The notes: generated by a model from the sequence alone, not told the origin. 64,000 nucleotides of DNA from Octopus sinensis (GCF_006345805.1 NC_042997.1:168578001-168642000), one strand, 5' to 3'; counted from the stretch's first letter, positions 31,701 through 37,700 are shown. A program made the numbers and translations.

Positions 31701-34700
31701 TTGAGAAGCCTAATTTCTCAAGATTGATATTTAGGCAGTGTGTCACATATCCCAGGGCCCCAATAATTACAGGTATAAACTTGAACTTGTAATCTGGATA
31801 GAGTAACTGTAGATTTCTCAATAGATCAGCATAGGTGTTCTCTTTTTCTCTGATCTTCAGCTTTATGTTAACATCTGCTGGGCAGCTAATTTCCATAACT
31901 GTGTACAGTTTCTCTTCTCTATCCCAAATCATTATATCAGGTCTGTTGTGCTTACATTTTATTGAGATCTTCACTGGTACATTCCACCAATATTCCTTTT
32001 CATTATGAGTGGTTATGGCTTCTACCATATTGTGGGTTTTTTTTTTTCTCCTCTTTATAATCCTTCCAACGGATTTCATTATAGAGTGTCCTAGCTACGT
32101 CATGTCTCATTGGTAGATAATACCATGATGACCTTTTTGGACAACTGCTTGTGATGTGGGTGATGTCTTCAATGCAAACTCCACAAAGTCTGCATTGGTT
32201 GTCACATTTTATGGCTTTTCCCACATTTCTATCTCTTTTGTGCATCAGGTACTTGGTTGATATTTCCTGTTCCTGGATTGCAAACGCATACCCTTCAAAG
32301 TGAAAGGTAGCAATCTGGCCATTGCTCCATGATAAACTGCTTTTATGATAGATGTTACTATCATCATGGAGCTCTCTACTAACATATCCCTGCATAGTCT
32401 TCTACTCATATAAGTTCATCCTTTCATCTGAGAATATGTTGCGGTAGAATTGTGTAACTTCTTTGGGCATGTATTCTAGGTTATCAGACAAAGAGTGTTG
32501 CTCAAGGAGCCACTTCCCAAGTCTCATGATGTTATCAGCTTCATGTATCAAACTTGGTCAAGGGATGCACTTCAACACTTGATGGTTAAAAGATGCTGCC
32601 GAAGGGATATGATGCGACATTCAGAGGCATATATGTATGTATGTATGTATGTATGTATGTATGTATGTATGTATGTATGTATGTATGTATGTATGTATGT
32701 ATGTATGTATGTATGTATGTATGTATGTACGTACGTATGTATGTATGTATGTATGTATGTATGTATGTATGCATGCATGCATGTATGTATGTATGTATGT
32801 ATGTATGTATGTATGTATGTATGTATGTATACATGTATGTATGTATGTATGCATGCATGCATGCATGTATGTATGTATGTATGTATGTATGTATGTATGT
32901 ATGTATGCATGTATGTATGTACATGTATGTATTTGTATATATTAATATATATATTTACAAAGACAGATCAGTGGATTAGTAGAACTGAAATGTTGAACAA
33001 AAAAACCTTTTACATGTCACCTACTTCTAGTAAAAGGTTGCCTATTCCTGTTCTAAACTAGTGCAAGAATCTAATCCAGCTTTATCAATTCTTACCGTTT
33101 TATTGATAGATTCACTAGAAGAACTTTATAAAAACTGCAAAGGATTTCACTTACTGCTTGCCCATTATGGATACCATAACAAGACGATGTTTCAATCTGT
33201 GTTTTATATCTGGAAAAAGAGAAAAATTCCATGTATAATATATATATTAGTTTTGTACTATATTTGCAGTTGATTCTCCGTACAACTGTAGGCAGGAAAT
33301 TTTTGGAAAATTTTGGGTTTTATTGGAGCGATTGTTTTTGTAACTTAATAAAAAAGTACAGCTTGTTTGTTAGACAGACAAACTGAGATTAGCAAGATAT
33401 ATGTTTTGCAATTCATTGGTTATAAGTTGAAAAGCCTATACAGAAACACATGTATGCATGTGTGTGCTTGTGTGTGCATGTGTGTGCATGTGTGTGTGTA
33501 TATCTAAATAATAATATGTACACACACACACAGAATTAATATATGTGTGTGTATGTATATGTATATTTATATGTGTATATATACATAGGCACAGGAGTGG
33601 CTGTGTGGTAAATAGCTTTCTTACTAACCACATGGTTCTGAGTTCAGTCCCACAGCATGGCACCTTGACACCTTGGGCAAGTGTCTTCTATTATAGCCTC
33701 AGGCCAACCAAAGCCTTGTGAATGGATTTGATAGACAGAAACTGAAAGAAGCCCATTGTATATATATATATATATATATATATATATATATATTGTTTGT
33801 GTGTCTGTGTTTGTCCCCCCCCCACCAACATCACTTGACAACCGATACTGGTGTGTTTACATCCCTGTAACTTAGCAGTTCAGCAAAAGGGGCCAATAGA
33901 ATCAGTACTAGGCTTACAAAGAATAAGCCCTGGGGTCGATTTGCTCGACTAAAAGCGGTGCTCCAGCATGGCCACAGTCAAATGACTGAAACAAATAAAA
34001 GAATAATAGAGTGCATATATATATATATATATATATATATATATATATATATATATATATATATATATATACATATATGTATATATATATAAGTATGTTT
34101 TTATTGATGTGTATATGTGTGTGCGGGAAAATTGCAAGGATTTCAAATAACAGGGAAAAAAGGGAACAACAGATTATACTTACTTCTGATTACAGTCACT
34201 TTTCATTACTACCTTTAAAGGCTTTGGTGCATTAACAAGTAATGTGATGCCCTTTGTAAAAGAATATAAAATGAAGTATTAAATTTTCTACTAAATTTTG
34301 GTTGAAATCTGGTTCTTTTAGTTACCATAAGAAAAACTCTATGTTTTCAAGTTCAACAAAAATTCAAAGATAAATTTAAGTTCAGTTAAACTAATTTGTG
34401 AATTTATTATTTCATAGTAAAATAAAGAGAGGTCAAAAACCACGGTCAATTTAAATGACTCTAACATTTGCCAAAAATTTGCGGCATTGTGCCAATGTTA
34501 GAAGAAATCATTATTTTAACCCTTTAGTATTCAGCTTACTCTGTTAAATGTAATGCTTATTTATTCACATTGTTTTGAATTATCATACATTATCTTGTAA
34601 TCTCAAAATTTTGATGATGTGCTTGTTTATTTTTAGAATGACATTGTAGGATAGTTCTGAGAGGTCAGATCTGGCCAGTTTGAACATAAAACAGGTAAAA

Positions 34701-37700
34701 TATTTAAGCCAGATATGGTCAGTTTACTGCATTTTTTTAAAGAGTTGTCAATTGACAGAACTGTTTGAGTGTCAGACAAAATACCTAGTGGTATTTATTC
34801 CAGCACTTTACCTTCTGAGTTCTTCCGAAGGTTGATAACAATAAAATAGCAGTCAAGTATTGGGTGTAATTTAATTGGCTTACTCCTCCCCACCTCAAAA
34901 TTCTTTCCTTGTGCCTATGTTAGAAACTATTATAAATAAGCAGAACTGCTTATTAATGTAGAACTATGTGACAACTGCAATACCCTTAATCAGATGTTTA
35001 CTGCATTAATGAAAAGAGAAACAAAAGTGGTGCTTATTGTTCTTGTTTTATTTGATGGTGTTTTGCCTCAGGTCACCATCAGAAGACCTATAATCAAAAG
35101 GCATTCCACTGTTTTTCATTTTTCCTTTTTTTTAATTTTAATTTCAGTGACTACCTTGTTCAGCAAATCTTTCTTTATTGAGTAAATAGTGTATGATTTG
35201 AAAGCTATTTTGCTGTTATTTCTAGCAGATTAAGTAACTGTGCAAAAGCTTCCACATCAGCATATATTCTGATGTATAAGGAGAGGTGATAGATGTGACT
35301 GTTTATGAAAGAGTTCTTCATTAGATAAGAAACTGTCTAGTAACCCTACTATAGTAATTAATTATCTTATAGTAAAATCTGATTTATTCTATTACAATTT
35401 AACACAGCTCGTTCGATATTCAGATTGAGTTTAATAGAGCTGAATGCTTTGGCCAGAGAACTTAAAGTTAATGGAATCTCAGAACATATCTGATAGGAAA
35501 ATTATTTATTAGAACTGAGTGTGTAAGCAAAAGACAAATTAGGTTTCTTGTGGTTGAGCAAGACACTTAAAAATGTTCTCTACTGCATCCTTGGCTGCAC
35601 AGAATTACAGAATTAGAACACAACATTAATCTCATTTTCTGATGTTATTCTGTAAGTTTTTTTGTTTTTTTTCTTGGAACTGTTGTGTTCCATTTCTAAC
35701 TTTAAACAATACAACGGATGATGAACTGAAAACAACAGACTACTATTATTTTTCTTTGGATACTAATTCAAAGAACTAATTCCAAAGATTGCAGGTAGTT
35801 ACAAGCAACCGCTCTAATATTGGTGCTATGATAAAATGCACCCAATACATTGGTGTATGTCAAAAATGGACTGTACAAGCAAAACATGGTTCGCTAACTA
35901 ATCTCGGAGGGCAGTAACTTCAAATAAGAACTGACTGGATCCATGAAAACCTATCCAACCCAGTCCAGCATGAAAAGAATACACAAAGTAATGATGATGA
36001 TCAGGATACATATGTGTACATGTATAAGTATATTTGAGTCTGTGTTTGTGTATACTAGTATAAAATAATGTGGTGAGTTATGTTTCTTTACGCCTTCCTC
36101 CACAGCAAAAAGAAAAATATAAAACTTAATTATTCAGTTACTAATGATTGATAAAATAAATACTTGAACTGGTATGATCAATTAGAACCCCTTAAAAGGT
36201 GGTAACCCCAGCTTGACCACCGTCAAATTACTAAAACCAATGAAAAAATGAAAAGTGAAAATATTTTTTACTTACACCTCCCAAACGGTTATGGGCATCT
36301 TTTTGTATTAAAAACCCTTTCACAGGCAAAACATAACCAGTATCTGGAAAATATGTAAATTGAACTTGAAAAATATTGTTGTCTTGAATTAAAGACATGT
36401 TACTGATTCCAGATGGATAAAAGACAGAAATAGGATTTGAACTCGGGTATACAACTAGATACTATAAGCATCTATTCTAGTTCTCTACCTCATTGTAATT
36501 TAATATACCTAAAATAAAGAAAAGAGAATACTTACTTGGCACAAGTTGTAGAACAACTCTTTGAGGTTTCAAAAGTCTCTTCTTTGTAGCTCTTCTATTC
36601 TGCAGAGTAAAGAAACAAAACTTTCAAGTAAAATGAATTACCATATTTACTCAAGTACATCGTGTTCTTGAATATAATGAAATCCCAACATTTTGGTCCT
36701 AAAAAATCAGTATCATATTTCTCTTATCTATTTTTCTTTTACATTTGCATATAATGCTAACTCACAATTTTAGTTGTTTTTTTTTAGTCAAGAGGGAAGG
36801 CTGTGCTCAGATTTTGTAGTGGGTCTTTGAAACTCGTAGGAATTGGGGATGAAGGTGTCCTGAAACCAAAGACCTGATCCAAATGCCTGCAATAGAGTAG
36901 ACTCTACTAAAAGCATCCAAGGTACCAATGGGGATATTAAATCAGGCAATGGATTAAGGCTGTTACCTATGTAAGCCATCATGAGAATTGAACTCAGAAC
37001 ACAATGAGCCAGAACAAATACAACAAGGTATCAACTCTGACATTCTTACAGTTCTGCCAGTCCACCATCCTGGATTGGTACTTTTTAATCAAACCTTGAA
37101 GGATGAAATGTAAAGTTGACCTTGGTAGGATTTGAACTTAGATTTTAGAGAGTTGGAACAAATACCACAAGACATTCATTAGGATTCAAGTTCCAAGTTC
37201 AAAGGGATTGGATGGTGACAGTCATCAGAATCCATGCAACCATGCAAACAGTGAGACTGGATGATGATGATGATTCTGTCCGAAACTCTGCCAGTTTCCA
37301 CTTAGATATGTTGTATTAAATTTCCTTTATTATGCTTGAGTAAATAGGGTATCCATGCAAATATATATATATATAATAAGCTTATCAAAAGAAAGTGCAT
37401 GGCTCAGTGGTTAGAGTGTCGAGCTTACAATCATGAGGTTGTGAGTTCGAATCCCAGATCGGGCTGCGTGTTGTGTTCTTGAGCAAGACACTTTATTTCA
37501 CGTTGCTCCAGTTCACTCAGCTGTAGAAATGAGTTGTGACATCACAGGTGACAAGCTGTATCGGCCTTTGCCTTTCCCTTGGATAACACTGGTGGTATGG
37601 AGAGGGGAGGCCAGTATGCATAGGCGACTGCTGGTCTTCTATAAAACAACCTTGTCCGCACTTGTGCCTGTGAGGGTAACTTTCTAGGTGCAACCCCATG

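What the first reader, a model, noticed from the sequence alone, without database searches (positions are those of the whole stretch)
34184..36599. A 'headless' integrin beta: the whole betaI/MIDAS ligand-binding domain appears to be deleted from an otherwise intact gene
In canonical beta subunits the ~240-aa betaI (vWA) domain is inserted into the hybrid domain right after the PQxxxLxL...F/V strand. Here exon 5 (phase 1 to 0) splices in frame onto exon 6 (phase 0), which is already the post-betaI hybrid. The 2,024-bp intron between them is largely filled by a piggyBac MITE and SINE remnants. It has no minus-strand ORF in the track, and I found no DLSxSM (DxSxS MIDAS)-like exon. The PSI, hybrid and I-EGF1-3 cysteine patterns are intact, which argues against a decayed pseudogene. 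BetaI mediates both alpha-propeller pairing and ligand binding, so this product could not act as a classical integrin. It could be an alpha-independent receptor, decoy or secreted scaffold. It differs from vertebrate ITGBL1, which has only I-EGF repeats and no PSI or hybrid.
Basis: partly seen in the sequence, partly recalled or inferred. Interest (0 to 1): 0.92.

Follow-up and report, generated by a model that had tools for sequence, protein, structure and literature searches.

The report
Secreted integrin-beta-like gene lacking head domain
This octopus gene really does encode an integrin beta relative with no ligand-binding head, but the loss is old: it belongs to a conserved, expressed family of secreted "legs-only" proteins found across molluscs, nematodes, arthropods and fish that is annotated automatically but apparently never studied.

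Summary
Exon 5 (36343..36276, minus strand) splices in frame across a 2,024-bp intron to exon 6 (34251..34184). This joins the two halves of the integrin hybrid domain with no betaI/VWA domain between them. Residues 1-412 of Octopus sinensis RefSeq protein XP_029637747.1 (976 aa, misnamed "tenascin-X") map exactly onto 16 window exons with this junction.

No betaI coding sequence exists in the window, in the O. bimaculoides orthologous locus or in a chiton homologue. The same scan finds every betaI exon of a canonical abalone integrin gene.

The gene is under purifying selection (dN/dS 0.30, p=5e-4). A 48%-identical relative, probably from another cephalopod, is an uninterrupted mRNA in 50 sequencing-run assemblies.

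The full protein has a signal peptide, PSI, an uninterrupted hybrid domain, I-EGF1, five I-EGF2-4 modules and a beta-tail, with no membrane anchor. AlphaFold2 and Foldseek match engineered betaI-deleted beta2 leg fragments.

The interpretation needs correcting. This is not an octopus-specific deletion from an otherwise intact integrin. Similar headless proteins occur in other molluscs, horseshoe crab, fireflies, nematodes and teleosts. Function is inferred only: a secreted, ITGBL1-like modulator or scaffold. Moderate interest.

The parts
40995..41049 (-). Coding exon 1: start codon and signal peptide ([18 protein letters not shown], ends in phase 1)
   Evidence: Exact match to P0159 residues 1-18. 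It is the only hydrophobic 19-mer in the 976-aa protein.
38972..39054 (-). Exon 2: PSI domain, first half ([28 protein letters not shown])
   Evidence: The intron position and phase match the chiton homologue and the canonical abalone gene.
38401..38505 (-). Exon 3: PSI domain, second half ([19 protein letters not shown]...HLKK)
36536..36599 (-). Exon 4: first hybrid-domain strand (…[11 protein letters not shown], ends in phase 1)
   Evidence: The phase-1 intron after this strand is shared with chiton and with canonical abalone beta.
36276..36343 (-). Exon 5: second hybrid strand plus junction loop ([23 protein letters not shown]), ending in phase 0 where canonical betas run on into betaI
   Evidence: Alignment A1 shows the gap starts exactly at the canonical DYPVDLYYLMDLS. 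The canonical abalone exon 5 continues into betaI with no intron here.
34252..36275 (-). Intron 5 (2,024 bp): the junction intron, with no betaI coding sequence and a ~215-bp MITE at 34512-34726
   Evidence: BetaI HMM and tblastn are negative. The intron is orthologous to the O. bimaculoides intron: 1,996 nt aligned at 91.5%. MITE copies are listed.
34184..34251 (-). Exon 6: first hybrid strand that follows betaI in canonical betas ([22 protein letters not shown], phase 0 in, phase 2 out)
   Evidence: It aligns to chiton RVTLRTKNKPSNLAISITSPC and to abalone KVILNTQNAENVTVKFFSKC, whose exon also begins in phase 0.
33155..33209 (-). Exon 7: hybrid domain ([19 protein letters not shown])
   Evidence: This corrects my first, longer model 33209..33096.
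28745..28797 (-). Exon 8: hybrid domain ([17 protein letters not shown])
27047..27140 (-). Exon 9: last hybrid strand and the CxCxC link to I-EGF1 ([31 protein letters not shown])
20257..20390 (-). Exon 10: I-EGF1
   Evidence: Pfam I-EGF_1 gives a weak hit.
16533..16599 (-). Exon 11: I-EGF2, first half. The RefSeq protein needs 3 more bases (to 16530) for Val283, which implies a non-GT donor.
9596..9677 (-). Exon 12: I-EGF2, second half ([28 protein letters not shown])
7452..7561 (-). Exon 13: I-EGF3
6088..6174 (-). Exon 14: I-EGF4 of the first module
4469..4506 (-). Exon 15: linker into the second I-EGF2-4 module ([12 protein letters not shown])
1672..1744 (-). Exon 16: I-EGF2 of module 2. 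The rest of the gene (564 residues: the remainder of module 2, modules 3-5 and the beta-tail) lies beyond the window start.
   Evidence: The remainder is seen only in P0159.

Best explanation
The window holds the 5' 42% of a real, intact, selectively maintained Octopus sinensis gene (RefSeq XP_029637747.1, 976 aa). It is a paralogue of integrin beta that has only the 'leg' domains. In order, these are a signal peptide, a PSI domain, a hybrid domain whose two halves are joined directly by a short loop, I-EGF1, five tandem I-EGF2-4 modules and a beta-tail domain. There is no transmembrane or cytoplasmic part.

Shown here: the architecture, the absence of betaI DNA, conservation, purifying selection, transcription of a probable cephalopod orthologue, and a confident predicted fold that matches crystallised betaI-deleted beta2 leg fragments.

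Inferred origin: the gene came from a canonical beta gene by loss of the betaI-coding part. That part runs from inside ancestral exon 5 to the phase-0 intron before the first post-betaI hybrid exon. BetaI is a domain inserted in a loop of the hybrid domain, so its removal leaves a foldable hybrid sandwich. The loss predates the chiton-cephalopod split, and similar losses happened again in other animal lineages.

Inferred mechanism (not tested): the protein is secreted. It has no MIDAS and no alpha-propeller interface, so it cannot be an adhesion receptor. It most likely acts outside the cell as a cysteine-rich scaffold or trans-acting modulator, as reported for vertebrate ITGBL1, which dampens integrin signalling. 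It would work through leg-type surfaces (PSI, hybrid, I-EGF, beta-tail) that bind integrin legs or other matrix partners.
For: Gene model:
- P0159 maps exactly onto 16 window exons.
- My independent 12-exon model has canonical splice sites and compatible phases.

No betaI:
- Searches are all negative, with a positive control on L009.
- Alignment A1 shows the gap is exactly the betaI domain.

Selection against O. bimaculoides:
- 375 codons, 17 synonymous and 21 non-synonymous differences, dN/dS 0.30, binomial p=4.8e-4.
- Exons are 96.6% identical and introns 90.1%.

Orthologues with the same junction:
- Argonauta hians, 65% identity.
- P0173, 48% identity, as one uninterrupted 983-codon ORF on 3.7-4.0 kb contigs. 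The index lists it in 50 blocks of run assemblies (24 read). Three contigs share a 5' end and two end in AATAAA.
- Chiton XP_064594424/5, with the junction at a phase-0 intron in the same place.

Fold:
- AlphaFold2 of residues 19-336 gives pLDDT 87.5 and pTM 0.71.
- Foldseek top hits are the beta2 PSI/hybrid/I-EGF fragments 5e6w (E 1e-27), 2p26 (TM 0.74) and 5e6v (TM 0.82, 3.0 A).
- The sequence aligns contiguously to 5e6w residues 10-313.

Secreted:
- The only hydrophobic segment is N-terminal, and Pfam gives no Integrin_b_cyt hit.

Family:
- An HMMER profile search puts about 25 cluster representatives, each matched in one contiguous stretch across the junction, at the top of 430 hits.
- The named members are listed.

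Origin:
- Intron positions and phases are shared with a canonical abalone beta gene.

ITGBL1 analogy:
- Song et al. 2018, as cited in PMC12395929.
Against: - No transcript from Octopus itself was seen here. The RefSeq model is a prediction, and the protein collection lists the full-length octopus proteins (P0041, P0159) only on genome records.
- The C-terminal 564 residues, including the lack of a TM, come from the RefSeq protein and not from the window.
- Pfam does not call PSI_integrin or Integrin_B_tail on the octopus protein. Those domains rest on alignment to PDB chains and to homologues.
- The functional mechanism rests only on analogy. Orthology to vertebrate ITGBL1 was not tested, and no vertebrate ITGBL1 appeared among the hits.
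- The deep phylogeny is unresolved, so a single ancient loss cannot be told from repeated losses among protostomes.
- The species that carries P0173 was not identified. Calling it a cephalopod rests on its identity to the octopus protein and its position in the tree.
Confidence: 0.8

Rival explanations
1. A recent, octopus-lineage deletion (perhaps transposon-mediated) removed betaI from an otherwise normal integrin beta gene.
For: The junction intron does contain a MITE. The flanking exons are homologous to canonical hybrid exons.
Against: - The same junction and intron occur in O. bimaculoides, Argonauta, a 48%-identical probable cephalopod mRNA and a chiton.
- The gene also lacks a TM and cytoplasmic tail and has five EGF modules.
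- The MITE is about a tenth of the intron, and the intron is orthologous between two Octopus species.
Confidence: 0.03
2. A decaying pseudogene or dead duplicate whose exons happen to remain open.
For: The collection lists the full-length octopus proteins only on genome records, so no octopus transcript contig was seen. O. bimaculoides annotation splits the gene into two models.
Against: - Sixteen exons are open with good splice sites.
- dN/dS is 0.30 with p=4.8e-4, and exons are more conserved than introns.
- All 132 cysteines are kept in Argonauta (132) and nearly all in P0173 (130).
- The probable orthologue is transcribed in many runs.
Confidence: 0.03
3. An assembly or annotation artefact. 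The betaI exons would exist but be missing from the assembly, or the headless form would be a minor exon-skipped isoform of a canonical gene.
For: Some headless entries in other taxa are unreviewed gene models and could be artefacts.
Against: - There are no Ns in the intron.
- Separate assemblies of O. bimaculoides and O. sinensis give the same structure with an alignable intron, and the O. vulgaris and Argonauta proteins come from further assemblies.
- No betaI signal appears in 64 kb, in L008 or in L001, whereas the control gene lights up.
- The mRNA contigs of P0173 contain no betaI.
Confidence: 0.02
4. It is the true orthologue of vertebrate ITGBL1. On this view ITGBL1 descends from this PSI-hybrid-EGF-tail family and later lost PSI, hybrid and beta-tail. 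This is compatible with the best explanation and adds to it.
For: - NCBI pipelines name several members 'integrin beta-like protein 1' (O. bimaculoides, Haliotis, Mytilus, Mercenaria).
- Both are secreted with no TM, and both have tandemly amplified I-EGF modules.
Against: - No vertebrate ITGBL1 was among the 119 hits.
- Module amplification is not ancestral in molluscs: chiton and Solemya have one module, abalone two and cephalopods five. The resemblance may therefore be convergent.
- The tree does not unite headless proteins.
Confidence: 0.25

Closest known systems
Canonical integrin beta subunits (e.g. the abalone beta-PS-like protein P0186; human beta2 and beta3)
   Same: PSI, hybrid, I-EGF1-4 and beta-tail domains are present with the same cysteine framework. 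Intron positions and phases around PSI and hybrid are shared.
   Different: There is no betaI/VWA domain (no MIDAS, ADMIDAS or alpha-propeller interface), no transmembrane helix and no NPxY cytoplasmic tail. The I-EGF2-4 unit is repeated five times.
Vertebrate ITGBL1 (TIED), the secreted integrin-beta-like protein made of ten I-EGF repeats
   Same: Secreted, no head, no membrane anchor, built of tandem integrin-type EGF repeats. The reported role as a modulator of integrin signalling (Song et al. 2018, via PMC12395929) is the best functional analogy.
   Different: The octopus protein keeps PSI, a complete hybrid domain and a beta-tail. By my own knowledge, not tested here, ITGBL1 lacks all three. 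Orthology was not tested.
Engineered betaI-deleted beta2 leg fragments (PDB 1YUK, 2P26, 2P28, 5E6V, 5E6W, 5E6X)
   Same: They have the same domain string, PSI / hybrid with betaI excised / I-EGF1-3. They are the top sequence and structure matches and align contiguously. They show by experiment that this arrangement folds without betaI.
   Different: Those are laboratory constructs of a human receptor. The octopus protein is a natural gene product with a junction loop a few residues longer, 13 more I-EGF domains and a beta-tail.
Headless integrin-beta-like proteins of other animals found here
   Same: All have a contiguous PSI-hybrid-I-EGF match with no betaI. Examples are chiton XP_064594424 and XP_064617978, Haliotis XP_046562643, Solemya KAL5018522, Mytilus XP_052068665, Tachypleus XP_076324501, Trichinella KRY10446 and Caenorhabditis angaria CAI5454655.
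   Different: Most have one or two EGF modules. Most nematode members lack a beta-tail hit where checked and end in an acidic stretch plus a hydrophobic tail that looks like a GPI signal. The teleost members look like separate, later derivatives of vertebrate betas.

Membership tests
Integrin beta subunit (canonical) | N-terminal PSI domain with its cysteine framework | tested here: met
   Aligns to beta2 PSI in 5e6w, 2p26 and 1yuk. The AF2 model superposes on 5e6v. Pfam PSI_integrin is not reached for octopus but is for chiton, horseshoe-crab and nematode members.
Integrin beta subunit (canonical) | Hybrid domain (beta-sandwich) | tested here: met
   Both halves align to canonical hybrids. 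The predicted fold has pLDDT 85-97 on either side of the junction, and TM is 0.82 to 5e6v.
Integrin beta subunit (canonical) | BetaI (VWA) domain with DxSxS MIDAS, inserted in the hybrid domain | tested here: not met
   No Pfam PF00362 hit. No tblastn or HMM signal in the window, although the control gene is detected.
Integrin beta subunit (canonical) | Four I-EGF domains followed by a beta-tail domain | tested here: met
   EGF_integrin scores 187 bits over five stretches. The C-terminus aligns to beta3 residues 488-687 and beta2 residues 435-674, which include the beta-tail. The tail lies outside the window, in P0159.
Integrin beta subunit (canonical) | Single transmembrane helix and a cytoplasmic tail with NPxY motifs | tested here: not met
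   There is no hydrophobic 19-mer apart from the signal peptide. The protein ends ...YVIRRKECEA, and Pfam gives no Integrin_b_cyt hit.
ITGBL1 (vertebrate integrin beta-like 1) | Secreted, no membrane anchor, no betaI | tested here: met
ITGBL1 (vertebrate integrin beta-like 1) | Body made only of tandem I-EGF repeats, with no PSI, hybrid or beta-tail | tested here: not met
   PSI, hybrid and beta-tail are present. Tandem I-EGF2-4 modules are present, five of them 126-129 aa apart.
ITGBL1 (vertebrate integrin beta-like 1) | Orthology to vertebrate ITGBL1 by tree or synteny | not tested
The automatic names 'integrin beta-like protein 1' are a lead only.
BetaI-less PSI-hybrid-I-EGF proteins (unnamed group delimited here) | One contiguous match from PSI through the hybrid domain to I-EGF1, with no ~240-aa insertion | tested here: met
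   P0041 and P0159 match profile positions 10-244 with protein residues 26-257. Canonical betas match in split stretches.
BetaI-less PSI-hybrid-I-EGF proteins (unnamed group delimited here) | Common descent of all members (one loss event) | tested here: inconclusive
   In an NJ tree of 229 columns, cephalopods get 96%, nematodes 97%, molluscs 13.5% and all headless 0% bootstrap support. A shared junction intron links octopus and chiton only.

The most novel reading that the evidence does not exclude
Animals from molluscs to nematodes, chelicerates and insects keep an old, uncharacterised class of secreted or GPI-tethered 'legs-only' integrin beta paralogues (PSI, uninterrupted hybrid, I-EGF, often a beta-tail). 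These would act in trans on integrins or matrix. Vertebrate ITGBL1 would be a further-reduced member or a convergent counterpart. The cephalopod version, with five amplified stalk modules, would be the most elaborate known.
Probability: 0.35. Interest if true: 0.7.

Novelty: new variant of a known kind. Interest (0 to 1): 0.5.

Why it matters
Integrin biology treats the beta subunit's legs as a mechanical and allosteric support for the head. A naturally occurring, conserved and selected protein made only of the legs, PSI and hybrid included, suggests that these domains have binding or regulatory functions of their own.

It also gives a natural counterpart to the engineered leg fragments used in structural work. 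It offers tractable models, such as the nematode homologues, for asking what ITGBL1-like proteins do.

On the practical side, it exposes inconsistent database names for one family: 'tenascin-X', 'integrin beta pat-3', 'integrin beta-2', and 'Integrin beta subunit VWA domain-containing protein' for proteins that have no VWA domain.

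Tried and rejected
- My first model of the hybrid domain used a single exon 33209..33096, chosen by splice-site and phase enumeration. Mapping of the RefSeq protein showed the real structure is two exons, 33209..33155 and 28797..28745, as in the chiton.
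- The first word-indexed homologue search with concatenated exons returned only the chiton protein and none of the octopus proteins. The octopus models surfaced only in the index-free HMMER search.
Aligning its exons as separate fragments misaligned them. I therefore used a chiton plus fish profile (A4).
- hmmalign of intact canonical betas did not span betaI. I excised betaI by HMM coordinates before building the tree.
- The Biopython bootstrap timed out, so I reimplemented it. The tree does not resolve deep relationships, and I make no claim of a single origin.
- Seven literature searches found no description of natural betaI-less PSI-hybrid proteins; an eighth failed on a malformed query. 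The only 'integrin beta-like protein' plus octopus hit concerned a VWA-containing mussel integrin. Only open-access text was searched, so absence is weak evidence.
- My recollection that C. elegans C05D9.3 is the nematode member could not be checked. The one relevant paper lists its Brugia orthologue as an EGF-domain protein recovered in a GPI-anchored-protein screen.
- I considered that the exon at 1744..1672 belonged to a second tandem gene. I rejected this once exon 15 (4506..4469) supplied the phase-2 link.

Full report
WHAT IS IN THE WINDOW

The window is AT-rich animal DNA full of microsatellites and transposon debris. The minus strand carries a multi-exon gene.

Exon 4 is 36599..36536 (…[11 protein letters not shown], ends in phase 1). 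Exon 5 is 36343..36276 ([23 protein letters not shown], ends in phase 0 at GGT|GTAAGT). Exon 6 is 34251..34184 ([22 protein letters not shown], starts in phase 0). The intron between exons 5 and 6 is 2,024 bp.
- A 12-exon model that I built from splice sites and homology is open throughout, and every junction is AG/GT.
- An index-free HMMER search later returned the annotated proteins of this very gene. These are Octopus vulgaris CAI9716324.1 ('integrin beta pat-3'), O. sinensis XP_029637747.1 and XP_036362697.1 ('tenascin-X'), both 976 aa, and O. bimaculoides XP_014791255.1 plus XP_014791256.1, which are one gene split into two models.
- The O. sinensis protein (P0159) maps residue for residue onto the window for residues 1-412, in 16 exons from 41049 to 1672. 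The window is therefore O. sinensis or something indistinguishable from it. The rest of the gene lies beyond the window start.
- That mapping corrected one of my exons: 33209..33096 is really 33209..33155 plus 28797..28745. It also added the signal-peptide exon and a linker exon.

IS betaI REALLY ABSENT?

- Aligned with canonical betas, the octopus protein, a chiton protein and a fish protein all lack exactly the block from DYPVDLYYLMDLS to the end of the last betaI helix. The hybrid strands on both sides align.
- Pfam finds EGF_integrin but no Integrin_beta VWA domain in the spliced protein or in the full RefSeq protein. A canonical control scores 348 bits for that domain.
- tblastn with five canonical betas gives no betaI hit in 64 kb at E<=1.
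- A betaI profile run against every stop-to-stop piece in six frames gives a best E of 1.9 in the window, 1.6 in the O. bimaculoides locus, 2.1 in the chiton locus and 1.1 in an mRNA contig. The same scan of a canonical abalone integrin gene returns eight exon hits from E 1e-20 to 1e-2.
- The intron has no Ns. 1,996 of its 2,018 scored bases align at 91.5% to the O. bimaculoides intron, which is about 1.1 kb longer. Missing assembly sequence is therefore not the explanation.
- A ~215-bp element starting TTAACCC at 34512-34726 has two more copies in the window.

IS THE GENE ALIVE?

- Against O. bimaculoides, 375 aligned codons show 17 synonymous and 21 non-synonymous differences. dS is 0.080, dN is 0.024 and dN/dS is 0.30. 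The excess of synonymous changes over the neutral expectation has binomial p=4.8e-4.
- Exons are 96.6% identical, against 90.1% for 17 kb of alignable intron.
- Argonauta hians has a 983-aa orthologue at 65% identity.
- A 983-aa protein at 48% identity (P0173) is encoded as a single uninterrupted ORF on 3.7-4.0 kb contigs. The index lists it in 50 blocks of sequencing-run assemblies, of which 24 were read. Three contigs share a 5' end and two end in AATAAA.
- In Octopus this gene spans more than 40 kb, so these contigs can only be spliced mRNA. P0173 has the same junction (…RRLGG|EVILSVKAP…) and the same five-module architecture.
- I did not see a transcript from Octopus itself.

THE WHOLE PROTEIN

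- P0159 has one hydrophobic segment, the N-terminal signal peptide, and ends …YVIRRKECEA with no membrane anchor.
- After PSI, hybrid and I-EGF1 come five I-EGF2-4 modules. Their Y-x-G-x-x-C-E-C motifs are spaced 129, 129, 129 and 126 residues apart, and the modules are 39-66% identical to one another.
- A segment then follows that aligns to the beta-tail of beta2 and beta3 up to the end of their ectodomains.
- Cysteines make up 13.5% of the residues (132 of 976).
- AlphaFold2 on residues 19-336, with a 29-sequence alignment of headless relatives, gives mean pLDDT 87.5 and pTM 0.71. The junction loop scores 77, between blocks of 85-97.
- The best Foldseek matches in the PDB are the laboratory-made beta2 leg fragments from which betaI was excised: 5e6w (E 1e-27), 2p26 (TM 0.74) and 5e6v (TM 0.82, 3.0 A rmsd).
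- By sequence, the protein aligns contiguously to 5e6w residues 10-313.
- Nature has thus made the same construct that crystallographers made. That construct is known to fold.

HOW OLD AND HOW WIDESPREAD IS THE LOSS?

- The first homologue found was a chiton protein (Liolophura sinensis XP_064594425 and XP_064594424) with the same PSI / uninterrupted hybrid / I-EGF / beta-tail plan and no TM.
- Its gene has the same intron positions and phases through PSI and hybrid. This includes a phase-0 intron at the junction, within one or two residues of the octopus one.
- A profile of the chiton and a fish headless protein, searched against 1.84 billion representatives, gave 430 hits. About 25 of the top 150 listed, most of them among the best-scoring, match in one contiguous stretch across the junction. 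These are mostly 340-620 aa, plus the 976-aa octopus protein. Typical 780-800-aa integrins match in two pieces separated by the head.
- Named members include Haliotis, Solemya, Mytilus, a second chiton paralogue, the horseshoe crab Tachypleus, two fireflies, nematodes and several teleosts. The nematodes are Trichinella, Bursaphelenchus, Caenorhabditis angaria, Necator, Pristionchus, Meloidogyne and others.
- Several members are backed by short transcript-like contigs (P0015, P0016, and Mytilus P0298 and P0299).
- Most nematode members end in an acidic stretch and a hydrophobic tail that looks like a GPI signal. In line with that, the Brugia orthologue of C. elegans C05D9.3 was recovered in a screen for GPI-anchored proteins. 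I could not verify that C05D9.3 is this gene.
- A neighbour-joining tree of 229 columns, with betaI excised from the canonical sequences, supports cephalopods (96%), the nematode group (97%) and two separate fish groups (94% and 99%). It gives 13.5% for molluscs and 0% for all headless proteins together.
- The loss therefore predates the chiton-cephalopod split, on the evidence of the shared junction intron. It has very probably happened more than once in animals, because the fish proteins look like recent derivatives of vertebrate betas. Whether the protostome members share one origin is open.

HOW THE LOSS HAPPENED (INFERENCE)

- In a canonical abalone beta gene, the exon after …QPQEVRFKIRP starts in phase 1. 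It runs from the second hybrid strand straight into betaI with no intron. The first post-betaI hybrid strand begins a new exon in phase 0.
- The headless genes keep the phase-1 start of exon 5. They end it early at a new phase-0 donor, and they resume at an exon whose 3' end matches the canonical one.
- Removing everything from mid-exon 5 to the intron before the post-betaI exon therefore leaves the reading frame intact. Because betaI is an insertion in a hybrid-domain loop, the fold is left intact too.
- This may explain why the event recurs.

WHAT IT PROBABLY DOES

- Without MIDAS and the propeller-binding face, the protein cannot be a classical adhesion receptor. This follows from established integrin structure.
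- Without a TM it is not a receptor at all in cephalopods.
- The nearest characterised analogue is vertebrate ITGBL1, a secreted stack of integrin-type EGF repeats reported to restrain integrin signalling during cartilage formation (Song et al. 2018, cited in PMC12395929).
- I therefore favour a secreted modulator or scaffold acting through leg-type surfaces. This is analogy, not evidence.
- Module number rises from one (chiton, Solemya) to two (abalone) to five (all three cephalopod proteins). The ITGBL1-like repeat array may therefore be convergent.

VERDICT

It is wrong in treating this as a singular deletion in an otherwise normal integrin.
- The gene is already in RefSeq and ENA under misleading names, and it belongs to a broad family.
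- I found no paper that describes the family's defining architecture, searching open-access text only.
- I rate it a new variant of a known kind (integrin-beta-like secreted proteins) and of moderate interest.

Noticed in passing
window 16530-16599 and 9677 (exon 11/12 junction): All three Octopus gene models contain Val283 (…CSPDVMKTN…). In the genome this needs the three bases GTA after GAT, so the intron would start AA instead of GT. The canonical GAT|GTAAAT…TAG|ATG splice is also in frame and would simply omit the Val.
   Followed up: partly
window 34512-34726, 40697-40908 (inverted), 1882-2100: Three copies of a ~215-bp element, 78-81% identical, starting TTAACCCTTTAG. This looks like a piggyBac-type MITE. 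All three copies lie in introns of this gene.
   Followed up: partly
window 23478-24380 and 31609-32094, minus strand: Long ORFs of 301 and 162 aa inside introns share motifs (…NRPDI…D(V/I)S(I/C)PAD(D)N…IP(I/V)I(V/I)GALG…). They look like retroelement ORF remnants. I did not classify them.
   Followed up: no
window ~29350-30190 and ~30190-31020: A tandem duplication of about 830 bp. The ORF lists show near-identical translated segments twice (for example 29449-29715 and 30285-30548), flanked by CA/TA microsatellite runs, within intron 7.
   Followed up: no
L008 (O. bimaculoides CM046601.1) and proteins P0160/P0161: The O. bimaculoides RefSeq annotation splits this one gene into 'integrin beta-2-like' (379 aa) and 'integrin beta-like protein 1' (604 aa). 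The first reads through the exon-14 donor to a stop, giving …CERREVCT*.
   Followed up: yes
L009 15230-15436 and 16123-16278 (Haliotis cracherodii canonical integrin beta gene): Two adjacent ORF pieces both match the same betaI profile positions (125-161), but the annotated protein uses only the first. This looks like a pair of mutually exclusive alternative betaI exons, as known for Drosophila myospheroid.
   Followed up: no
database names of family members: One architecture is named 'tenascin-X', 'integrin beta pat-3', 'integrin beta-2', 'integrin beta-5-like', 'integrin beta-like protein 1', 'EGF-like domain protein' and, in UniRef for two nematodes, 'Integrin beta subunit VWA domain-containing protein'. 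The one so-named member I scanned, Bursaphelenchus P0018, has no VWA hit.
   Followed up: partly
P0174 (Mercenaria mercenaria 'integrin beta-like protein 1', 771 aa): This protein has an odd architecture. Two blocks of EGF modules each end in a beta-tail-like CxxCPxC segment, with a PSI-like cysteine stretch between them and no obvious hybrid domain. It may be a fused or tandem gene model.
   Followed up: no
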